This document shows, piece after piece, positions 11,575 through 22,811 of a stretch of 49,633 bases of DNA. Origin of the DNA: Leidyana gryllorum EB-2025a. Lineage: Eukaryota; Protista; Apicomplexa. Each line of letters opens with the position of its first letter. The stretch's first letter is position 1. Below the pieces are notes generated by a model. That model ran no database searches, was not told the origin of the DNA, and saw only the letters and a list, made by a program, of their open reading frames with translations. The stretch spans positions 1 to 49,633 of the forward strand of contig JBLWGC010000012.1 of the NCBI GenBank assembly GCA_048772705.1, given 5' to 3'. A program made the position numbers and the translations under genes.

Positions 11575-13068
11575 ATGAAAGGTTTAGCAATTTATGCCTC
11601 TCCACCATCGAGGGTTGAGTTCGATCCAAGCTGGGGACTACAATTCCTGAGGTCTGTTCGCCAAATATGGACTCACTACTGTGGGTCACCGGCCTCTCAC
11701 ATATTCGGATCGGTCCAGCTGCTCTTTCGAGACCTCAATGTGACAGATGAATACCTAATTTTCTCTCACTCTATCCTCGCCTATATCTTTTTCGGGGAGG
11801 GAGTCAGTAATGTCACAGTCCTCCCGATCGGTCGCCCAAAGACCGATACAGCGTGCCACCAGTTCTGGTACAACTTTCCGGTCCGACTTCTGACGGCTTT
11901 TGAGGCCATCGGCAATGTGGAGGAGTGCGAGTTGGACGCCGTAGTGACTCCCTTAACTCCCCCCACTGCAGAGGAACAGCGCCTCATAGAAGCCGCATAC
12001 CACGATGCGGTAGCCGCTCTCAAGGATAGCGTCCTTCCGACGCCTGGAAACAAATACAAAGGTGTGGCATTCGGTGGCTCGTTTGATGGTTTGCATTACG
12101 GCCACGTCTTGGCTCTGCTACGACTCGCCAAACTCTTTGAAACGGGTGCGGAGATGGCTGCCATTGGGGTCACCGTCGACGAAGTCATGGCCAAGAAACC
12201 GGCGGCCCCTATGGCAATGCGCGGCAGAGATCGGATGGACTGCTTGCAGCGCTGCATTTCATACATATTGGCCCTACGAGGCTTCTATCCCACAACCTCC
12301 TTCACCCAGACGCAACCCACTCACCACTTGCAAGAGATGCTGAGAGCTATCACCTGGGCTTCCTCCGTCTTTCCGTCCAACTGCTCCTACTGGGATGCCC
12401 CAGATGGCCACCACGTCCTCTGTGCAGTCTCAGAGCTCTACAAAGATGGGATCGGACACGCTGGAGCTATCAGGGATTTGGATGCCATCTTGGTCACCCC
12501 CGAGACTGTCACTGGTGGCAACGTCGTCAACAACTACAGAAAGGCGCGACACGACTATCGCACTCTCGATATCCTCGTCGCCCCCATCGTGTCGCCCGTG
12601 TCGGAAGTATTCGGCCCTCCAGCGGCCAGATCACCCAGCCGTATTGACGGGAAGGCCAGCAGCCGACACTTAAGGATCAAGCTGGAGAACGCTTGGTCCG
12701 ATAAGTCTTATATGGTCAAGTGTTACGATAAACTCGTCAGTCAGATTGGCCTCGATGCCGAATCGAACTCGATGCTCAAGCGCTTTATGGCCATCCCTCA
12801 CGTAACTGTCCATCGCGACCAATCTGAAGATGCATGGCGACTATTGTACAAAGAGCTGGATCAGTCCACCAACTACAATCCTATCGAAAAACTGGCAGAT
12901 ATCTTCATCGGTCGCCCTGCCACACAAGTGCTGCACTTCCTTCATGATCCTCAACTGGCGAACCATCCAGTCGCCTCGGAATGGATCTCCGTGGAGACCT
13001 TAGCCCGCCAGTGGGAAGTGAATGCCGACTATTTTGATGCCAAAGACACGCCAGATGACACTGCGTGA
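11575..13068 (+). CDS. Phosphopantetheine adenylyltransferase-like (HxGH cytidylyltransferase family) protein
   Basis: VAFGGSFDGLHYGH, IGVT, DAILVTPET..GG..VN..R and K.SS..LR motifs, typical of eukaryotic PPAT/COASY. Intronless ~500-aa ORF. Confidence 0.8.
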   Translation: MKGLAIYASPPSRVEFDPSWGLQFLRSVRQIWTHYCGSPASHIFGSVQLLFRDLNVTDEYLIFSHSILAYIFFGEGVSNVTVLPIGRPKTDTACHQFWYNFPVRLLTAFEAIGNVEECELDAVVTPLTPPTAEEQRLIEAAYHDAVAALKDSVLPTPGNKYKGVAFGGSFDGLHYGHVLALLRLAKLFETGAEMAAIGVTVDEVMAKKPAAPMAMRGRDRMDCLQRCISYILALRGFYPTTSFTQTQPTHHLQEMLRAITWASSVFPSNCSYWDAPDGHHVLCAVSELYKDGIGHAGAIRDLDAILVTPETVTGGNVVNNYRKARHDYRTLDILVAPIVSPVSEVFGPPAARSPSRIDGKASSRHLRIKLENAWSDKSYMVKCYDKLVSQIGLDAESNSMLKRFMAIPHVTVHRDQSEDAWRLLYKELDQSTNYNPIEKLADIFIGRPATQVLHFLHDPQLANHPVASEWISVETLARQWEVNADYFDAKDTPDDTA

Positions 13069-13294
13069 CAACGCTCTTTCTTGTTCCTAACCACAACCCA
13101 CGGCAACACAAACGACAGAGATCCGTGTCTCCGATGTGTGTGCGCGCACACACGGGCTCGAAATAATTCCAGATGCAAGCTACAACTGTGTGGCACTGCT
13201 TTCAGGTCACAGCTGATAATCTCAGGCACCTATCATGATAACGTCAAAGAACGGACCTTCAAATTCAGAAAGTGGCAGACAGATTTTTTAGCCG

Positions 13295-14125
13295 ATGAGC
13301 CGCCTGAGGGCGCGGTGGCTAGACGACAACACGGATTTGGAGGTTATAAAGGAGAACTCATGCCGCAGACGGATCTTGAGTTCTTCGCGTAAGACTCACA
13401 GGAAGCATTACACAGCGGCGATCCTCGAAGTCTTGACTCTTCATGTGCAATTGCTCATGGACTATGCCGAACCATTGAGAGTCTATATCTACTACGAGAA
13501 GTTCCTGGAGCAACGTCCCCGCAATGGGATGCATAGCGAGGTGAAGCGCTGGCTGAAAATGGCGAAGGAGAAGCTTCAGAGGAACATTCGAGACATAGAC
13601 CGCATATTGATAGAAATTCCCAAAACGGTTAATCAGCCACTGAAAGAATACAACAGAATCAACCAAGAGCTCAAGATGGCTCTCAATAGTCCCTGTACCA
13701 CATGCGACCCTCTGCTGCTGCCAAGACGGTCCGGGGACACTTCAAAGGATAGTTCGGAGATGCTGGTGGCAGCCACACGGTTGGCCAGATTGCGGGGTTC
13801 ACTTCCATTCATAAAAGCGACACTGCCCAGTTGTGTACCGCGAAGTTTGATCCGACTCGCGGGGTTGGAGGCGCGTGCTTGGGCCACGTTGAGGAAGATT
13901 TTGAAGGATCTGTCACATAGAATCAGCCACGCTATAGGCCTGGTGGAGTCAGTGCACCCCGATTTGATAAAGATAGTGAGGGTACTCAAGTCATCAGATG
14001 GGGCGCTGTCAGCAGGCCTCAGAGGGAACCGATTTAACTACGGGATCTTCGAGGCTGCTGGACGCTTGAGGACGATGAAGGAAGAGCAGTCGCAGCGGCG
14101 AATAGAGCCAAGTTTCGTAATGTAA
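13295..14125 (+). CDS. Hypothetical protein, 276 aa
   Basis: ATG-initiated ORF filling the gap and ending 7 nt from the convergent V-ATPase stop; no recognised motif. Confidence 0.55.
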   Translation: MSRLRARWLDDNTDLEVIKENSCRRRILSSSRKTHRKHYTAAILEVLTLHVQLLMDYAEPLRVYIYYEKFLEQRPRNGMHSEVKRWLKMAKEKLQRNIRDIDRILIEIPKTVNQPLKEYNRINQELKMALNSPCTTCDPLLLPRRSGDTSKDSSEMLVAATRLARLRGSLPFIKATLPSCVPRSLIRLAGLEARAWATLRKILKDLSHRISHAIGLVESVHPDLIKIVRVLKSSDGALSAGLRGNRFNYGIFEAAGRLRTMKEEQSQRRIEPSFVM

Positions 14126-14132
14126 TGACTGT

Positions 14133-17100
14133 TTACTCTGTGTCAGCACCGCTAAGGATTCTAAGGAAGCTAAAGGGAATGAACTTGTATCCGTCTGCCG
14201 CATAGAACTTATTCTGGAACTCTACCCACTGTAACCTCAACGCGTGCAGGAAGCACTCGAGTGTGTCCATGCACAGCATAATCGCAAAGGTGACACCTGC
14301 GAAAGCGCCGAATCCAAAGAATATGCAGATTGCCGGCAGGATCACAGTGCCCTGCGGCTTTACTGTGGCTTCGATGATCATCAGTAGTATATTTTCGAAG
14401 AACACCTAAGCGAGGTCGCATTTCCGTTCGGACTTTGCTTACCAGAGCTAGTTGTTGATGAGCGAGACTCAGCGCCCAGAGACGGAGGTACGAAGCAGTA
14501 TTAGAGATAACTCCCAATACATATTCAATGGTTTCAATCATCTGATGGATCATAATCTCGCCAAACTCGAATTCTTCTTCCTCCACCATACTCGCTTCAG
14601 TCGAGGGTTTCTGAGTTTCAGTGGGGCCAAGTGGTACGACCTCCTCGTTGGTGGAGGCGACGTTTGTGAGATCGCCTTTGGCGGACATTTGTTTCTTGTG
14701 AGCAGCCAGCAACAGGAGGGGCTTAGGTAGAAGCATCCAGGGGATGCAAATGACCATAACGGCTACCAGCACCGTCTGGATCGTCTTCTGGTGGGCAAAC
14801 AGCTGATCCTCCGGCTCGACGTCCTTGAGCATACACATTCCGATAAGAGTGGAAATGATAGAAGGCCGAGGTTGACCCGGTTCGACCTTTGCTGCCCATT
14901 TGAAAACGATCAGGAAATCCATATACCTAAACATAAGGTCCCAAGTCGACTCAGATCACCATTCAAATGAATCGCTCACCCGACCAATGCGATGAGAAAC
15001 AATATTTGGGGGATGAACTCAAAGTAGAGGGTGAGATGGTCCTTGAAATGAGCGGCGTTGAACGCCTTAAGTATCACTCCTGCTCCCATCTGGACGAATG
15101 CCACAATCACGGCGAACTTCATCTTGAACGAGTTGAAGAAATCCAACTCATTTGACGCGCCCTTCCAGACCGGATCGAACCCGAACGGGTACGGGAACCG
15201 CTTTTCAGGATCCTTCTCATACTGCAATCAGAAAAGCGCACGTGTGCTATGTTCGGAGACACCGGGTAGGAAGGAGCTGGGGGCGTGCGGGTGGCTGGGG
15301 ACGTGCGGGTGGCAGCTGGAAGTGAGGGAGAAGCAGCACAGAGGCGTTCTTGTGTGTGCATGACAGCTGTGTGTGTCACTGTACTCACCACGCCGGCTTC
15401 AGAGGTTTCGTGATACCGACTGCCAAACAAATCTACCCCAAGTGAGAAGAAGTCGTTGTAGATAAAACCAGCGAAGACGGCGAAGCATCCCATCATGAAG
15501 ATCATGTACCGTCCGTACACAATCATCTGAGTCATCTCCTCGTCAATTTTGCTTAGCTGCACAATAGGTCAGATAACGCCAGTAACCTCTCCCACGACTC
15601 ACCTTCTTGTAGGCCAAGCAAAGATAAAGCCCGAAAAGCATGACCAGCCCGCCGTGTCCGATATCACCATACATCACACCGAATAGGAACGGGAATGTGA
15701 CGATAGTTAGGAGCGCAGGATTGGCTTCGCGATATCGCGGGACACCATATGTATCCACCACGTTCTGGAAACATTCAGTAAAAGCAGTTGTTTTGATGTA
15801 CGTCGGAGGGTTGCGCCGGGTCGCTTCTCTATCGCTCAGTAGGAAGGCAGACACCTGATTGGGTCCACTGAAACTGCTCAGCAGTTGACGAGTTAATTCC
15901 TCTTCCTCAGCCGGATACCAACACTCAGCCCTCAGAGTCGCCTCTGTTTCCTCGAACAGATTGAGACATCCAAATACGGCTTTTTGCTTTTGGCAGAACA
16001 TCCGCCAGTCCTCGATAAGACTATTCCCGCCGGGTCGCACCGGCTCAAGCAATACAGCAACTTCGTCGAAGAAGAACTCTTCAAATGCCTCCAAGGCGCG
16101 GGTCTTGTCGTCAATGATCTCTTGGAGCACCTTGACCTTCTCTGCGGCGGCCCGTGCGTTCTTCGGCCTGGTTGTTCCGTCCATGCATCGACCCACTTCC
16201 CTCCACTCACCAGTCAAACACTTCAATTCCAAATGCTTGGCATATGCGACTGATTTTCTCGTGCATTGCCGATCCAACACCGCCTTGGTAGTAAATAACG
16301 AACACGTTGCGTTTGACGATGTTTCCAGCATCGTCGTTGGAGTAATATTCGTCCAGGTCCTCGATATGCGTATAAGCATTACCACGAGTAGCACGGAACA
16401 ATGTTCGTGCCAACTTCTCCTGGTCGCTTTGCAAAACCACTCCCGCAAAACTCGAGAAACCAGTTACTGTGGGCGCCGCCTCTGCATCACCCTGGAGCAG
16501 AGCTTGAGACGCTGTTTGAGCAGGCCTGACAAGATCAAGATCATCACACCGCTGATCGGCCTTACGTCTCCAGGCTCATACTGGTAGGATGCCGCGTGCT
16601 CAACGACTTGAACGCCACCTTTGCCACCGCTCGCTCCATTACCTACAGTACAAACGAATCAACCATCGACAACTGGGTCCCATCAGTGCTAATGAATGCG
16701 AAAACGGTCGGCGCAGCATTCAGCACACCCCCCAACCCGCCGCTGCCGGTCGCGCCAGCCGTTCAACAATATCACAATGGATAGCGAGGGCGTCATTCGA
16801 TATAATGACGGAGACGCCCAAGAGCACACACGTGTGCGGTGTTAATTTGATTCGCATATGTGCGTGACACTTACCGCGCGGTTCCGTTGCTTCAACAAAT
16901 CATCGTTATTCTCTCGGAAGCGAACGAATTGAGCGTACAGGGATTGTAGTGAGTCCTCTACGCCGTCCAGTAGAAAGTTGTCATTCTCAAGGAAGTCTTG
17001 ATAGTGTTTGCCCTCGATACGCGCGCCAGGTAGTTTATAGATCTCGTCCGTGAGGTATCTAATCGTTTTTGATCGCCATATTTGTGGGATGTAACTTACC

Positions 17101-17287
17101 GCAGCATCCGTTCCATTTCTTCTATACGTTGTATGTATCGGCGATATGGACGACGCATTGTTGCATGATTCATATCCTGGATCTGCAGGTTACCCTTGGT
17201 ACCCAGCAGGGTGACTATTTCCACAGCACGGTCCACTGGGATGACCAGCGTACCATGCTGCATCCGCTCGGAGCGCAGGATTCCCAT
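14133..17287 (-). CDS. VPH1: V-type H+-ATPase V0 subunit a (multi-exon)
   Basis: MGILRSE.M start; [60 protein letters not shown] (essential Arg), [16 protein letters not shown]. Confidence 0.96.
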
Positions 17288-17401
17288 GGTCCGATCCACC
17301 CAAAAAGTTTCGTTGGCTTTCGATTGCGGCTGGTTGCAATTAAGCGTCCGGCTTGATCATTAGTCAGTGAGTGGGGAGGCTCGAAAAAGTTAGTTTTTGG
17401 G

Positions 17402-18142
17402 ATGTGGAGCCAGGATATACAGGAATTCGAAGTGGACAATGACATCGAGGAGTACTTTGGGGACTTTGCGGGCATTGCGGACATTGAGAAAGAGTCTGTG
17501 GTGACGGGTGAGCAGAGTGACTATATGGTTCCCGGTCTGGAGTTGGTGCGGGGTAGCGGTGCTCTTCCTCAAACGGGCATATATATCCAGGACGGGACTG
17601 TCTACTCTGCGATAGCTGGTTCTCCCTCGGAATGGAGAGCTCACAAGCCGGCTCCTAAGCCAGGTTCTGAAGTATTGGCACGCGTGATTCGAGTTACTCC
17701 ACGTCACGTTGTGTGTGATATCTTTGCATTTGACGGCCAATTGGTGAAGAATACCTGCCGTGGACACATCAGGTGAGTTTGATTGAATATATATCACACT
17801 TGGAACCTGTGTGGGCAGACCTGCTGATATTCAGCCCGTTGGAATCGACAAATTATCCCTTTTGGACTGTTTCCGACCATTAGATATTATTAGGGCGCAG
17901 TTAGTGAGTGACAGAAGGTGCCCTTGTTCTTCCTATGATGACGGCGTTTGCAGCTCGCGACCGGCGTAGCAAGAAATTTCCTGCTAAGCACAGTCGGTAT
18001 TGATCAGGGGGTGATTAGGGCTCGTTCACAGACTTCAAATGAGGTTATGCAACCTGTCTGTTCCTACCTGCTCCGTTGTCCCAAAACGGGTGCATTGGAG
18101 CGTCGGAAGGTGGCTCGACCGCGCCATGAGAGTGAAAACTAA
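17402..18142 (+). CDS. CSL4: Exosome complex component CSL4 (2 introns)
   Basis: N-terminal VPG..L...G.GIY, S1 domain (PGSEVLARVIRV...G.IR; CFRP.DII.A), C-terminal GVI.ARS...CPKTG.E.RKVA. Confidence 0.88.
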
Positions 18143-18663
18143 CTATTTGGCTTCGACCGCAGTGAAACAATCGCGAACCTGCGGATGGTACATCAGTAAT
18201 GTGGTAGAATTGACTACAGCCAGATCTGTAATGTTGCGAATCGAAATCTCGGTTGCTTGAAGTCTCTTGAACTTACCGATATCGTCTCCTAACTCACATA
18301 TGGAGTGTTGTTCGGCTGAGTCCAAAGTGATTTGCTCTGAGCCTCCGGCTTGACCGATGATTTGACAGTATTTGCTGGAAACCCGCGGCAATGGGATTTT
18401 GACAAGACATTCCACCGTGCGATCTGCATCCGATGCAAACACACAAACTGTGTACACACACACACTCGGCATCTCACTGTCTGAGGTTTCCAGAACCATT
18501 TTTGTTCCGTCATTCGATATTACTTTGCCGATCAGAGATACTCGCTGACCAATGTGGCGTCCTAACATCTCGCCATTGACGCGACTGCATTGTATGTAAA
18601 CATGAATAGCCAATAGATGGAGGCCACTCACTGAGGAGCAGCCGTAGAGTCAGAGTAGTACAT
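18143..18663 (-). CDS. RPA3: Replication protein A 14 kDa subunit (3 introns)
   Basis: Spliced product MYYSDSTAAPHRVNGEMLGRHIGQRVSLIGKV...KYCQIIG...DLAVVN fits the small OB-fold RPA3 pattern. Confidence 0.8.
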
Positions 18664-18707
18664 TAAATGTGATGGGGGTGGGAGATTTTTTTGCCGAACA
18701 CCTCCTT

Positions 18708-21700
18708 ATGGCGAGTGACTCGGAGTCGGATGACGTCGTCGTCATTGAGGGAGAGGAGCTGCAGGCTCTTGTGAACTCCAATGAGAAGTCTCCTGGGCCC
18801 TCACGTTATATCCGTATGGTGGACGTCTTGGGACGACGGCAGCGTGGATGTGGAGACTGGGAGTTATTCGTCGAATGGGACTCTGTCTATGGCAAGTTCA
18901 AACTCTGGGAACCTATCAGTGTCTTTGGAGACCAAACTGAAGCCCTCCTGCGAGCCTTTGATCAGGAGACTGGCCGTTTGCGCGAGGACGGCACCCGGGG
19001 TCTCCCTATCATCGACCCATCCATCCCTGACTGGGATGCCGGGGAACGGCGTCAGATTCCGACACCTCCAGCTGGAGCCACTCTGACAGTCGAGAAGATT
19101 CTCGCCTATCGAGAAGTGGATAACAAACCAGAGGTGCTGATCAAATGGTTACACTATCCCATGACAGATAGCACCTGGGAACCGGTGTCAAATCTGGTCG
19201 ACTTTCTCTCTTTCTACAATGAAATTGACGACGCTCGACGCTTTTGGTCAGTTATCTCGAGACGCAAACATATAAATCTCACATCCAAACACTTGGCCCC
19301 CGCTTCCCCCGACGCTGCCTCTGCCGCCAAACTCTTCCGCGCTCCCGCCAATATCTCCGCCTCGCGGCCCTGCCCGCTCTCCACCGTACATAACTCGCGT
19401 CGGAGCTCCATCGAGGGGGGACGCGCAGCCCCCTCTCGGGGCCCTCAGCAGATCTCGTCGACCACTACGGCTGCCCCACCAGATGCCCCGTCTCCTCTCG
19501 ATAACGAAGTTGAACCCACAGCGTTCCCCAATCGCAAACGTCATTTGGACTCCAAAGACGTCGACGACCAAACTAAGCGACCGCGGACACAGCCGCCGCC
19601 CCCTCCACAGCGCTCCCCCAATGAAGCCGACTCTCTCCAGAGACCCTCTACTCAGGCTGCGGCCTTCAGTCGTCCTGAGTCACAGAAATCGAGTTCCCAG
19701 CCCCCACCTCGGCCCGAGACTTCGCAACGACCACCGATCCGTGAGGGGCCGCCGGCAGGGCGTTCGCCGACGCCAATTACAGCAGCAGCACCGACTGCCG
19801 CTACCGCTGCCACTGCTGCTGCTGGTGTCCAAGAAGAAGTGGCCACATCGTCTCGAGAGTCCGCTGTGGCTGCCACCGTCAATGCCCACCACCGGACTGG
19901 CGAAGAAGAAATTGAGGTTATAGAAGAGGACCGTATTGAGTCTATGAGTCTCGACACCTCGACGAGCAGTAAGAAGCGTCCAGTGTCGCTGTACGAACGT
20001 TTGAGAACCAAAAAGGTTAACGCCGCACCGTCGCTCGGTTCGGTGACCGAGTCACCACCGCCGAACGATGCGCGTATGCCACAAGAAGAAAATGTCGGCC
20101 TGGACGACAGTGACCTTCTCGCTGCAACAGAAGGCGGCAAACCACAGTGGCTGCAGTCCAGAGACGCCGTGGCAAAGACCCGGGCTCCGACTCAAAGCTC
20201 TACGACGGGCTATTCGGCCGCCTCTTCTTCCCCTCCGCAGGTTCTGCCTCCTCCTCCCACTACACTTCCCCCGCCTCTTCCAACCCCCAGACCGGTCGCT
20301 GACCTTCAGAATCAGCCGTCTCCCAGTCATCCTCTACCGGCCAACTATATGGAGTTGGCGGTAATACCAGGCGCGTCTCCGCCGGTTTCGAAAACCACTG
20401 CTGAAAGACAACGGAAGGCGTCGAGCGAAGCCCCGTCAAAACCAGCTGCTGCTCAAAGTAGCAGTCGATCAACTGGTGGTGGATCGCCTCGGCCATTGTT
20501 AAAGACCCCGAGAGGGCCTCTAGTACCCCTCCCGCTTCCGTCCCCCCCCACCCAGTCGTCCTCGTCTGCACCACCGAGACCCGTTCCCCCACCAAAGGCG
20601 GCGGCGGCGTACTCTCAGGAGGAAGAACAGTCCCAGCAGCACCCGCGTGCTCAGCCCCCTGCGATCATCACGCCGGCTGTGGCTGCTGTGCCACCTGCGC
20701 AACCCATTATGGTTCAAAATGTGGGACATCACAACGCCACCGCAGCGGTTTCACGCAGATCTTCGGTCGCGTCGCAGAGCGGAGGAACATCGATAAACTC
20801 TCGGGGAGTGACGAGTCCAATTTCCCCAAGGGGGACAACACAGTCCGACAAGCGAACCGCACAGCCGCAAAGAACCTCTCGTCAAGATGAGCGCCGCGGC
20901 TCGACCGCCAGCGTCAAGACATCACAGGATGACAGACTGCGTCGCACTCTAATGTTTGACGGACTCAGATCAGCAGTCAGAGGAGTCAAATCTTTATTCA
21001 AAGCTCGCGACTCGGCCCTCTTCAACGGTGTGCACTGTTTGTGTGCCGCTCAGGGACCAATGCAGGTATTGCCGAGTATTATAGAGGCGTTCAGACGCGC
21101 AGGATGGAACGATCCCTTAGGCTCAAAAGTTCCGGTGAGTCAGTCTGTCTCCTCCCACTCTCGGTATCCAAGTTTTTAGATACGATGCTATCTGTGCGAA
21201 TGTGACAGTCACCTCGCCTGCGCCATGAAGTCTATGGATTGGGAGTACGGGGAAGTCTGTCTCAAAAACAAGACCGATCCGGCGCTCGAACACTTCACAC
21301 CCGCCTATCTGCAACAGTGGTCTCGCAATTTCCTCTGTCTACCGTGTCGCCTCCTTCTGACAGTGAGTTTCTTACTGTCTCAAACACTTCAATTCCCCAA
21401 CAATAGGACCCTATATACCAAGTGGAAGAAATCATCGCGGGAGGCTGGCTCTCGCCAGCACCGGTCACCGACGAAGCCAAACTCAAACGGCTGCAAGCAT
21501 CCGACTTACCAAAGGCCTCACCCAGTGAGCTGCGCCTACGTGGATTCTTGAATAGACAGGATAGTAGCGATGTCCGAGGTGAGTTGACGACCCAAATAAT
21601 GACTGATCGGACATAATATGCGCTTCTGCAGCCGGAAAGAAACTGCTTCAAATCCGTTCATTCAAAATCCGATCGGATATGAGCAGCTTCGCACGCTTCC

Positions 21701-22532
21701 CCAACGATGAGGTCGAGATTTCTTGGAAACGACTCAACAGCGGTGCTCACGGAGTTCATAAACTGGCCAAACCGCCTCATTTCCGCATCCGTAAAGACAC
21801 TGTATATAATCTTCCCACCAGCGCTGGAGACGATAATGTGGCCCACTTTGAGATCAAAGTCCATGCGGCCTTCGAGAATATACTCGATGGCCCCTACTTT
21901 GTCGCTTTTGTTAAAGCCAAACCTGCCGCAACTGCCGACGACTTCTTCGCTACCATACAAAAGAAGGGCGTCGGCGACTATCGACAGTGTATGAGCCATG
22001 CCCTCGCCCTGCTACCTGCTCCCCCCTCCGCTGACAAGGACGGGACAGAGAGTGACGAAGAAATCGAGCTCGTCAACATGCGCCCAACCGTCAAACTCAC
22101 CTGCCCCTCCACTATGCTCAGAATGAATGTACCCGCACGGGGTGTCCTCTGCAAGTAAGATCGAAATACTCACACCCTCAAAAGCGCCCCCTTTGTAACA
22201 GACATGTGCAATGCTTCGATCTGCACTTCTTCCTTCAATCGCAAAATACCACTATCCATCAAGCTCGATGGAAGTGCCCCGTCTGCCGTATCAATTGCCG
22301 CCCCCATGAGATCATGATCGACTCGTGGCTCCTGAACGTGCTCAAATCCACTCCTGAAGATGTCGTCGAGGTAACACCCCCGACAATCCTCCCTGCAGTC
22401 AAATCCCGCTTTTAGGTTTTGATGGTAGCAGCACCCGATAACACCCTACAGTGGGAAGTGACCAAACGCACCAATGTCCCTGAACTCGGTGGTAAGGTGG
22501 GGGACAAAGAGCCTGTGTGTGTGGACCTATAA
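18708..22532 (+). CDS. SIZ/PIAS-like SUMO E3 ligase (PHD + SP-RING/MIZ) with two N-terminal chromodomain-like regions
   Basis: Chromo motifs FVEWD...LWEP and VEKIL...LIKW..YP..DSTWEP; PHD HCLC..RCYLCECDSHLAC..FLCLPCR; SP-RING LTCP....RM.VPARG..CKHVQCFD...WKCPVC...MIDSW. Five short GT-AG introns join these in frame; ends EPVCVDL*. Confidence 0.85.
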
Positions 22533-22589
22533 CCAACCAACTTTTCTGGAGAACCGACCCAGAAAGTGCTGAAGATCTGCTACAAACAA

Positions 22590-22811
22590 ATGGATCCCTG
22601 CTGTTACTATCAACGTCAAGAAGCTGCGGAGGCTAAGGCGGCGAGGGCAACCTTACAGCAGTTCATAGAAGGCCTATCTATGGAAGAACAAGATGCCTCC
22701 TTCGTTCAGGAGACTCAAAAGTGGCTCTCGGAAAATCCGGGAGCTGATGCTTCGGCCCTCAAACTCCGATTTCAAGAACTCCAGGCAGCATTAGATAACA
22801 GCAAGCAATGA
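22590..22811 (+). CDS. 73-aa protein resembling the C-terminal helical lid of Hsp70
   Basis: ATG in A-rich context; AARATLQQF...VQETQKWLSENPGA....K.RFQELQ resembles the Hsp70 lid pattern A.N.LE....E..WL..N..A.....K..ELE. Confidence 0.55.
   Translation: MDPCCYYQRQEAAEAKAARATLQQFIEGLSMEEQDASFVQETQKWLSENPGADASALKLRFQELQAALDNSKQ

What the first reader, a model, noticed from the sequence alone, without database searches (positions are those of the whole stretch)
18708..22532. SIZ/PIAS-type SUMO E3 ligase fused to two chromodomains, with several SIM-like motifs
Seen in sequence: one spliced frame carries two chromodomain-like regions (~18805-18930, ~19080-19205), a long Pro/Ser disordered linker, a PHD finger ending CLPCRLLLTDPI (like plant SIZ1 CEICRL..ADPF) and an SP-RING. 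SIM-like motifs lie at both ends and inside (DDVVVIEGEE, EEIEVIEED, terminal PVCVDL). Known: SIZ/PIAS proteins normally start with a SAP domain, which I cannot see here. Inference: a histone-methyl-lysine reader that directs SUMOylation, combining HP1-like reading and ligase activity in one chain.
Basis: partly seen in the sequence, partly recalled or inferred. Interest (0 to 1): 0.8.

Follow-up and report, generated by a model that had tools for sequence, protein, structure and literature searches.

The report
Chromodomain-bearing SIZ/PIAS SUMO ligase of gregarines
This is a real six-exon gene for a SIZ/PIAS-type SUMO ligase whose usual DNA-binding SAP head is replaced by two chromodomains, a layout shared by at least four other gregarine parasites and, as far as I could find, not described in the literature.

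Summary
One + strand gene (18708-22532, six exons, five introns of 44-53 nt, 1196 codons) encodes these parts in order:
- a divergent chromodomain (CD1);
- a canonical chromodomain (CD2, Pfam E 1e-12);
- a roughly 580-residue Pro/Ser/Ala-rich linker;
- a C4HC3 PHD-like finger of the plant-SIZ1 type;
- a PINIT domain;
- an SP-RING split by an intron;
- a hydrophobic C-terminal tail.

No SAP domain is present. A canonical SAP-PHD-PINIT-SP-RING gene lies elsewhere in the same 15.5-Mb genome.

No RNA run was listed for this organism. The single-chain reading therefore rests on three things:
- the unbroken 809-codon first exon, which ends inside the PHD finger;
- two full-length models from other gregarines whose names and source read as transcript-assembly products (Gregarina sp. 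Poly1, Blabericola migrator), with the same layout;
- two related genomic loci.

The Gregarina niphandrodes annotation is cut in two at an assembly gap.

The functional inference is only partly supported. The aromatic cage is incomplete here (CD2 has Leu-Trp-Tyr), and only the Trp is conserved across species. Methyl-lysine reading is therefore unproven.

Best reading: a chromatin-tethered SUMO E3, a new architectural variant of a known enzyme family. Closest analogues are plant SIZ1, CBX4 and MPP8. Exons were never joined for any search.

The parts
18708..21134 (+). Exon 1 (809 codons): N-terminus, CD1, CD2, disordered linker and the first Cys pair of the PHD finger. An alternative ATG lies at 18672.
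   Evidence: Unbroken ORF 18669-21179. Donor GTGAGT at 21135. The exon tail aligns to the orthologues. tblastn of P0001/P0007 is colinear.
18729..18758 (+). N-terminal SIM-like motif DDVVVIEGEE (aa 8-17)
   Evidence: SIM core with 7 acidic residues within 6 positions. Absent from the orthologue N-termini.
18807..18953 (+). CD1, a divergent chromodomain (aa 34-82)
   Evidence: 15.8 bits against the own-genome chromodomain HMM, 0 of 2000 shuffles above 6.0. hhalign probability 94.9%, E 4.5e-8. Strand-strand-strand-helix at pLDDT 70-82. Pfam Chromo hits the equivalent region of L048 weakly, 18 bits.
19083..19259 (+). CD2, a canonical chromodomain (aa 126-184; Pfam core 19086-19205)
   Evidence: Pfam PF00385 E 1.3e-12. 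PDB sequence hits Rhino 1.8e-7, CBX1, HP1. Fold matches HP1/Rhino/MPP8/CBX at Z 6.2-7.3 over whole domains.
19305..21030 (+). Low-complexity linker of about 580 residues (Pro 15%, Ser 14%, Ala 13%) with basic NLS-like clusters
   Evidence: Composition. No Pfam hit. Orthologues have unalignable linkers of comparable length.
19905..19931 (+). Internal SIM-like motif EEIEVIEED (aa 400-408)
   Evidence: Not conserved in position in the orthologues.
21036..21347 (+). PHD-like C4HC3 finger of SIZ1 type, interrupted by intron 1. The following D-P-I-Y lies in exon 3.
   Evidence: Pattern CxC-x31-CxxC-x4-HxxC-x36-CxxC with all eight ligands conserved in five species. No Pfam PHD hit. The best ESM Atlas structural match is the plant SIZ1 cluster with PHD.
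21135..21179 (+). Intron 1, 45 nt, GTGAGT...TTTTTAG
   Evidence: Exon 2 starts exactly where tblastn of three orthologues starts, at 21180.
21180..21362 (+). Exon 2 (61 codons), the rest of the PHD finger
21363..21406 (+). Intron 2, 44 nt
   Evidence: GTGAGT...AATAG. The frame continues into D-P-I-Y, as in the orthologues' D-P-F-F.
21407..21930 (+). PINIT domain (exon 3 and the first ~100 codons of exon 4; intron 3 = 21579-21631, 53 nt)
   Evidence: Not seen by Pfam or BLASTP. Exon 4 is 46% identical to P0001. The AlphaFold model of that region of P0001 matches the PINIT domains of Siz1 5JNE/3I2D at Z 12.5/12.3, PIAS3 12.2 and PIAS2 12.0, with unrelated hits at 9.3 or below.
22090..22292 (+). 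SP-RING (zf-MIZ), split by intron 4 (22155-22201, 47 nt). It has the Cys-x-His ... Cys-x-x-Cys pattern.
   Evidence: Pfam halves 18.6 + 30.8 bits. 38.8 bits in the genome search. Family profile against PDB: Siz1 E 5.8e-19, Siz2, PIAS2, PIAS3. Orthologue SP-RINGs score 53-63 bits in one piece.
22293..22532 (+). SP-CTD-like tail (end of exon 5, intron 5 = 22371-22415, exon 6 22416-22532 with stop TAA)
   Evidence: The profile alignment to Siz1/Siz2 runs on past the RING. Exons 5 and 6 are colinear with the orthologues.
22512..22529 (+). C-terminal SIM-like PVCVDL
   Evidence: G. niphandrodes ends in EIIDL and the L048 protein in a VILDIDD motif plus an acidic tail. The other orthologues are weaker.

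Best explanation
The gene encodes a Siz/PIAS-family SUMO E3 ligase of the PHD-bearing, plant-SIZ1-like type. The N-terminal SAP domain of the family has been exchanged for a tandem pair of chromodomains.

Shown by tool results:
- the domain order CD1-CD2-linker-PHD-PINIT-SP-RING-tail;
- its conservation in five gregarine-related sources;
- a separate canonical SAP-bearing paralogue in the same genome.

Inferred from established knowledge of Siz1/PIAS (Yunus and Lima 2009; Streich and Lima 2016):
- the SP-RING binds the charged E2 (Ubc9~SUMO);
- the PINIT domain positions the substrate;
- the tail with its SIM-like end holds the donor SUMO.

Also inferred: the chromodomain pair, on a long flexible linker, tethers the enzyme to chromatin, so that nearby chromatin proteins are SUMOylated. 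The ligand of the chromodomains is open. It could be a methylated histone tail in this species, or another protein or nucleic-acid partner, because the aromatic cage is not conserved in the family.
For: - Gene model: GT-AG introns of 44-53 nt with all frames fitting. tblastn of full-length orthologues hits the exons in order.
- Domains: Chromo E 1e-12. CD1 by HMM, shuffles, hhalign and fold topology. CD2 fold Z 6-7.3 to HP1-class chromodomains. PINIT fold Z 12.0-12.5 to Siz1/PIAS2/PIAS3. SP-RING profile E 5.8e-19 to Siz1. The best Atlas structural match is plant SIZ1 with SAP and PHD, and no listed cluster has Chromo.
- One chain: the first Cys pair of the PHD finger lies in the same 809-codon exon as the chromodomains. 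In L048 the chromodomains and the whole PHD lie in one 661-codon ORF. P0001 (1269 aa; its source name reads like a transcript-assembly contig) and P0007 (1117 aa) carry both Chromo and zf-MIZ.
- Paralogue: the genome has only two zf-MIZ loci. The other encodes SAP (23.2 bits), PHD, PINIT (23.9 bits) and zf-MIZ (58.6 bits).
Against: - No RNA data for this organism, so the transcript is inferred.
- The spliced protein itself was never scanned or folded in one piece. The ligase core was modelled on orthologue P0001, and there the SP-RING came out at pLDDT below 40.
- The alignments are shallow (5 and 12 rows).
- The aromatic cage is incomplete and unconserved.
- Pfam does not recognise the PHD or PINIT of this protein.
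- No biochemical evidence for E3 activity or chromatin binding.
Confidence: 0.8

Rival explanations
1. The chromodomain pair is not a methyl-lysine reader. It is a protein- or nucleic-acid-binding module, as in CHD remodellers, cpSRP43 or chromo-shadow domains, that recruits the ligase to a partner rather than to a histone mark. This rivals the reader's mechanism but fits within my best explanation.
For: - Only the central Trp of the cage is conserved in either domain across five species. The first cage position of CD2 is Leu/Leu/Met/Val/Asn and the third is Tyr/Leu/Leu/Val/Asn.
- In G. niphandrodes and L048 the W-E-P motif of CD2 is degenerate, and Pfam no longer recognises CD2 there.
- Tandem-chromodomain structures (CHD4/5, cpSRP43) appear among the fold hits, though weakly.
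Against: - In this genome CD1 has Tyr-Trp-Tyr and CD2 has two of three aromatics.
- The best sequence and fold matches of CD2 are H3K9me3 readers: Rhino, HP1, CBX1, MPP8.
Confidence: 0.45
2. There are two separate genes, a small double-chromodomain protein and a SAP-less SP-RING ligase, joined only by reading through a long spurious ORF.
For: - No RNA evidence here.
- The G. niphandrodes annotation has two gene models.
Against: - An 809-codon stop-free frame is not expected by chance, and it ends inside the PHD finger, whose other half is in exon 2.
- The G. niphandrodes split coincides with a run of N in the assembly.
- P0001 and P0007 are single full-length models.
- L048 has the chromodomains and the PHD in one ORF.
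Confidence: 0.04
3. This is a recent chimera: a chromodomain captured from one of the genome's many chromovirus retrotransposons and fused to a PIAS gene in this species only.
For: The genome holds at least 113 chromodomain matches, most of them in ORFs of about 1200 codons. CD2, like many chromoviral chromodomains, lacks the first cage aromatic.
Against: - The tandem module is conserved in register in five sources that are only 26-30% identical to the window over it, so it is old.
- The best in-genome match of CD2 is only 35% identical, lies in a 439-codon open frame and has its chromodomain at the very N-terminus, which looks like a host gene (by eye, not tested); the next best lies in a 984-codon frame.
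- None of the ORFs listed in or beside the gene looked retroelement-like by eye, and exon 1 has no Pfam hit besides Chromo; the flanks were not scanned.
Confidence: 0.05
4. It is a catalytically dead, PIAS-derived scaffold, comparable to MPP8, whose PINIT-like domain only docks partners.
For: - MPP8 shows that chromodomain plus PINIT-like without ligase activity exists (PMC7618375).
- The SP-RING was poorly modelled.
Against: - The SP-RING is present with the Cys-x-His...Cys-x-x-Cys pattern conserved in all orthologues.
- It is strongly similar to active Siz1/Siz2/PIAS2/PIAS3.
Confidence: 0.08

Closest known systems
Plant SIZ1 (SAP-PHD-PINIT-SP-RING-SIM), and the canonical SIZ1-like paralogue in this same genome (contig C104, about 594300-597500, minus strand)
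   Same: - PHD finger starting CxC and ending CxxC followed by D-P-F/I-aromatic, then PINIT, SP-RING and a tail with a SIM-like end.
- The best Atlas structural match is the Streptophyta SIZ1 cluster.
- Profile hits to Siz1/Siz2/PIAS2/PIAS3.
   Different: - No SAP; two chromodomains and a linker of about 580 residues stand in its place.
- The PHD has much longer inserts and is missed by Pfam.
- The PINIT sequence is too diverged for Pfam or BLASTP against the paralogue.
Human MPP8 of the HUSH complex (PMC7618375)
   Same: - A chromodomain at the N-terminus and a PINIT-fold domain towards the C-terminus in one chain.
- The MPP8 C-terminal domain appears among the fold hits at Z 9.3, and the MPP8 chromodomain among the CD2 hits at Z about 7.
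   Different: - MPP8 has one chromodomain, ankyrin repeats, no PHD and no RING, and is stated not to be an E3 ligase.
- Here the SP-RING is intact.
- Common descent is not shown.
CBX4 / Polycomb 2 (PMC2808386)
   Same: A chromodomain protein that promotes SUMO conjugation and uses SIMs, so the idea of a chromatin reader with SUMO E3 activity already exists.
   Different: CBX4 has no SP-RING, PINIT or PHD. Its E3 activity rests on SIMs and Ubc9 binding. The two are unrelated outside the chromodomain.
Yeast Siz1/Siz2 and animal PIAS1-4
   Same: The PINIT fold and SP-RING sequence, including the acidic strand that precedes the RING.
   Different: They carry an N-terminal SAP and no PHD or chromodomain.

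Membership tests
Siz/PIAS SUMO E3 ligases | SP-RING (zf-MIZ) with the Cys-x-His ... Cys-x-x-Cys zinc site | tested here: met
   Pfam halves 18.6 + 30.8 bits on either side of intron 4; 38.8 bits in the genome search; family profile against Siz1 E 5.8e-19. The ligand pattern is read from the alignment. The identity of Siz1's ligands is from memory of Yunus and Lima 2009.
Siz/PIAS SUMO E3 ligases | PINIT beta-barrel directly upstream of the SP-RING | tested here: met
   Tested on orthologue P0001, which is 46% identical over exon 4: Z 12.0-12.5 to Siz1, PIAS2 and PIAS3 PINIT domains, well above unrelated hits. The window's own PINIT was not folded, because it spans two exons. Pfam PINIT is not hit.
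Siz/PIAS SUMO E3 ligases | N-terminal SAP domain | tested here: not met
   No SAP hit at E <= 1 in exon 1 or in P0001/P0007. The paralogue on C104 does have SAP at 23.2 bits, just under the 23.9 cut-off.
Siz/PIAS SUMO E3 ligases | SIM C-terminal to the SP-RING/SP-CTD | tested here: inconclusive
   The protein ends in PVCVDL. Two orthologues end in clear SIM-like cores (EIIDL; a VILDIDD motif plus acidic tail) and three are weak.
Siz/PIAS SUMO E3 ligases | Stimulates Ubc9-dependent SUMO transfer | not testable with these tools
   Needs an in vitro SUMOylation assay.
Plant-type SIZ1 subfamily | PHD finger between the N-terminal targeting domain and PINIT | tested here: inconclusive
   The C4HC3 pattern is conserved in five species and is followed by a D-P-F/I-aromatic motif as in the paralogue. 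There is no Pfam PHD hit, and the AlphaFold model of this part is largely helical.
Chromodomain (Pfam PF00385, HP1/Polycomb class) | Three-stranded sheet plus C-terminal helix, with a profile match | tested here: met
   CD2: Pfam E 1.3e-12, fold Z 6.2-7.3. CD1: hhalign probability 94.9%, HMM 15.8 bits against a shuffle maximum of 6.0, same topology.
Chromodomain (Pfam PF00385, HP1/Polycomb class) | Three-residue aromatic cage for methyl-lysine | tested here: not met
   CD2 has Leu126-Trp147-Tyr150 against the HP1/CBX1 alignment. CD1 has Tyr34-Trp57-Tyr61 with altered spacing. Only the Trp is conserved in the orthologues.
Chromodomain (Pfam PF00385, HP1/Polycomb class) | Binds methylated histone tails | not testable with these tools
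   Needs peptide arrays or ITC.
MPP8-like (chromodomain + ankyrin + PINIT-like, HUSH) | Ankyrin repeats and no RING | tested here: not met
   No ankyrin hit and an SP-RING is present. It resembles MPP8 in layout only.

The most novel reading that the evidence does not exclude
The gregarine protein is a self-contained read-and-write enzyme. Its chromodomains would recognise a heterochromatin mark, or a heterochromatin protein, on the abundant chromovirus-type retroelements of these genomes, and its SP-RING would then SUMOylate local silencing factors. That is the reaction that animals split between separate proteins, such as HP1 or MPP8 on one side and PIAS or Su(var)2-10 on the other. As an active chromodomain-PINIT-RING chain, it could also show what kind of ancestor gave rise to the RING-less chromodomain + PINIT-like layout of MPP8.
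Probability: 0.2. Interest if true: 0.75.

Novelty: new variant of a known kind. Interest (0 to 1): 0.5.

Why it matters
SUMO and heterochromatin are linked in many organisms. Examples I cite from memory are PIAS/Su(var)2-10 in piRNA silencing, Pli1 in fission yeast and SUV39H1-promoted HP1 SUMOylation. CBX4 and the PINIT-like domain of the H3K9me3 reader MPP8 are documented in PMC2808386 and PMC7618375.

A natural fusion conserved across a lineage is 'Rosetta-stone' evidence that the two activities work on the same substrate neighbourhood. It also shows that the SAP targeting head of Siz/PIAS ligases can be exchanged for another chromatin-targeting module.

On the practical side, it corrects the G. 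niphandrodes annotation, where XP_011133579.1 is an N-terminally truncated model. It also gives gregarine and apicomplexan chromatin biology a defined candidate. The impact is limited because gregarines are hard to manipulate and the ligand of the chromodomains is unknown.

Tried and rejected
- Word-index protein searches found nothing useful. Exon 1 whole was swamped by low-complexity words. Residues 1-215 gave no hit. P0001 residues 860-1235 found only itself.
- RNA runs: none was listed.
- Metagenome contigs: no relative with exon 4.
- Exon 4 against PDB sequences gave only noise.
- BLASTP of the PHD and PINIT exons against the canonical paralogue was not significant, E 0.3-0.4. The gene is therefore not a recent duplicate.
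- My first donor for intron 1 (21066, giving a 114-nt intron) was rejected. The 23 extra codons up to 21134 align with the orthologues, and the 45-nt intron fits the other four.
- The idea that the acidic 'EEIELV' stretch before the SP-RING is a new SIM was rejected. It aligns with Siz1's and Siz2's own acidic strand.
- MAFFT misplaced short exon fragments in alignments A2 and A3. They were dropped from A4 before folding.
- Atlas feature searches gave only generic Chromo or zf-MIZ clusters below 0.9.
All searches were made exon by exon or on orthologue proteins returned by the tools.
Full report
**What is there**

The region 18669-21179 is one stop-free frame of 836 codons on the + strand. Reading the DNA with the translations gives a six-exon gene:

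| Part | Coordinates |
|---|---|
| Exon 1 | 18708-21134 |
| Exon 2 | 21180-21362 |
| Exon 3 | 21407-21578 |
| Exon 4 | 21632-22154 |
| Exon 5 | 22202-22370 |
| Exon 6 | 22416-22532 (stop TAA) |

The five introns are 45, 44, 53, 47 and 45 nt long. All begin GTGAGT, GTAAG or GTAAC and end YAG. The coding sequence is 3591 nt, or 1196 codons.

I first placed the donor of intron 1 at 21066. I moved it to 21135 because the 23 codons in between align with the orthologues and the intron then has the same size as the others.

tblastn of three orthologous proteins hits the exons in order. Exon 2 starts exactly at 21180 in all three.

**Domains**

- Pfam finds one chromodomain (CD2, aa 127-166, E 1.3e-12) and a zf-MIZ/SP-RING cut by intron 4 into 18.6 and 30.8 bits. 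The six-frame search of the genome gave 38.8 bits, over the family cut-off.
  - It scores 15.8 bits against an HMM built from 23 chromodomains of this genome, while 2000 shuffles never exceeded 6.0.
  - The five-species CD1 profile matches that chromodomain profile with hhalign probability 94.9%, E 4.5e-8.
  - Pfam Chromo weakly hits the equivalent region in one relative (18 bits).
  - AlphaFold2 on the five-sequence alignment gives two strand-strand-strand-helix modules (35-82 and 128-184) at pLDDT 70-86.
- CD2 superposes on Rhino, HP1, MPP8, Chp1 and CBX chromodomains at Z 6.2-7.3 over the whole target domains.
- Between linker and PINIT lies a C4HC3 pattern (CxC-x31-CxxC-x4-HxxC-x36-CxxC) followed by D-P-I-Y. 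All eight ligands are conserved in five species. The same frame of motifs occurs in the canonical paralogue. Pfam does not score it as PHD, and the model of this part is largely helical, so I call it PHD-like.
- The stretch from exon 3 into exon 4 has no Pfam, BLASTP or PDB sequence match. The AlphaFold model of the same region in orthologue P0001 matches the PINIT domains of Siz1 (Z 12.5 and 12.3), PIAS3 (12.2), PIAS2 (12.0) and Siz2 (11.5). The next hits are at 9.3 and 7.4.
- A profile of the family's ligase core hits Siz1 (E 5.8e-19), Siz2, PIAS2 and PIAS3 in the PDB.
- Its best structural match among ESM Atlas clusters is plant SIZ1 (zf-MIZ, SAP, PHD). No listed cluster carries Chromo.

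**One chain or two?**

No RNA run was listed for this organism, so the transcript is inferred. The inference is nevertheless strong.

- The chromodomains, the linker of about 580 residues and the first Cys pair of the PHD finger lie in one exon. The rest of the finger is in exon 2.
- An exhaustive HMMER search of 1.84 billion representatives with exon 4 returned five true relatives.
- The four whose source names a species are gregarines:
  - Gregarina sp. Poly1 (P0001, 1269 aa; its source name reads like a transcript-assembly contig of 8372 nt);
  - Blabericola migrator (fragment P0002 and its full-length cluster member P0007, 1117 aa);
  - G. niphandrodes (P0004).
- The other two have no species label: a Logan contig (P0003, locus L048) and an EukProt fragment (P0005).
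- P0001 and P0007 each carry Pfam Chromo and zf-MIZ and the same CD1.
- In L048 the two chromodomains and the complete PHD lie in a single 661-codon ORF.
- In G. niphandrodes the upstream ORF has both chromodomain-like modules. A run of N then separates it from the ORF annotated as 'MIZ/SP-ring zinc finger protein', so that annotation is truncated.

**Context in the genome**

- The assembly is 15.5 Mb, and the gene is single-copy.
- There are only two zf-MIZ loci. The other, on contig C104, encodes SAP (23.2 bits), PHD (18.2), PINIT (23.9), zf-MIZ (58.6) and an acidic SIM-rich tail.
- The chromodomain form is therefore an additional, old paralogue and not a replacement. The two share 36% identity over the SP-RING half and nothing detectable elsewhere.
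- The genome also holds at least 113 chromodomain matches, most in ORFs of about 1200 codons, typical of chromoviral pol genes.

**How it probably works**

By analogy with Siz1 and PIAS (established structural work, cited from memory):

- the SP-RING engages Ubc9~SUMO;
- PINIT positions the substrate;
- the C-terminal part with its SIM-like end (PVCVDL here; clearer in two orthologues) holds the donor SUMO.

The SAP domain normally gives DNA and nuclear-scaffold targeting. Here a chromodomain pair on a long flexible linker is the obvious substitute, which implies chromatin-tethered SUMOylation.

I do not endorse 'HP1-like methyl-lysine reader' as shown:

- Against HP1/CBX1, CD2 has Leu-Trp-Tyr at the cage positions.
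- CD1 has Tyr-Trp-Tyr with different spacing.
- Across the orthologues only the Trp is kept.

The ligand may be a methylated tail in this species, or a different protein or nucleic-acid partner for the family as a whole.

The two strong SIM-like motifs in exon 1 are real but not positionally conserved. Ligases of this family are often SUMOylated and SUMO-binding themselves, so these motifs are plausible but unproven.

**Comparison with what is known**

[quoted passage not shown] It fails the SAP criterion.
- It works most like plant SIZ1.
- In concept it resembles CBX4, a chromodomain protein with SIM-dependent SUMO E3 activity (PMC2808386).
- In layout it resembles human MPP8, which has a chromodomain plus a PINIT-fold domain but no RING and no ligase activity (PMC7618375).
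- Five full-text searches and a 2020 review of ubiquitin-like modifiers in protozoan parasites, checked by term search for its PIAS/Siz/E3 passages (PMC7600729), turned up no description of a chromodomain-SP-RING protein.
- The architecture is nevertheless present, unremarked, in public data (precomputed Pfam of P0001). I could not run a domain-architecture query over all eukaryotes.

**Limits**

- The exons were never joined for any search or fold. The ligase core was therefore tested exon by exon and through orthologue P0001.
- In that model the SP-RING itself was poorly predicted (pLDDT below 40).
- The alignments are shallow.
- That the organism is a gregarine is an inference from the nearest relatives of this one gene.

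**Verdict**

The architectural reading is supported and extended, by the PINIT domain, conservation across gregarines and the canonical paralogue. The methyl-lysine mechanism is unproven and is not a conserved property of the family. This is a new variant of a known kind, of moderate interest.

Noticed in passing
G000 contig C104, about 594300-597500, minus strand (L001 / L046:1300-4480): The canonical SIZ1-type SUMO ligase of the same genome: SAP, PHD, PINIT, SP-RING, then an acidic tail with several SIM-like cores (for example IDLVEL, VAVITV). It is the only other zf-MIZ locus found.
   Followed up: partly
L047:5954-9431 (G. niphandrodes KK211521.1, reversed): The public annotation XP_011133579.1 (441 aa) looks N-terminally truncated. 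An assembly gap (run of N) splits the gene. The upstream 228-aa 'hypothetical' model lies over the ORF that carries the two chromodomain-like modules.
   Followed up: partly
L048:1468-8822 (Logan SRR11177099 contig), compared with window about 13000-22532: Possible conserved gene order. A small gene lies between the two in L048, and a small minus-strand ORF between them in the window.
   Followed up: partly
whole genome G000 (for example C201:27699-81343, C96, C55, C230): At least 113 Pfam Chromo matches in 15.5 Mb, many identical in score and lying in ORFs of about 1100-1270 codons in clusters. This fits several chromovirus-type LTR retrotransposon families, some in nests.
   Followed up: no
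window 18143-18708 and 22532-22590: Very tight gene spacing. A minus-strand ORF ends (at its start codon) at 18631, under 80 nt from this gene's ATG. The next + strand ORF has an ATG 58 nt after this gene's stop codon.
   Followed up: no
model of P0001:850-1269 against PDB 8qfb_B: The C-terminal domain of human MPP8 (ankyrin plus PINIT-like) is the best non-PIAS structural match (Z 9.3, 157 residues, rmsd 4.8). It covers the helical PHD-like region as well as the PINIT barrel.
   Followed up: partly
window 19980-20000 and 19530-19600; P0001:170-200; P0007:165-215: Basic clusters of the K-R-P-R / K-K-R-x-R type follow CD2 in the window protein and in both full-length orthologues. They look like nuclear localisation signals (by eye only).
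   Followed up: no
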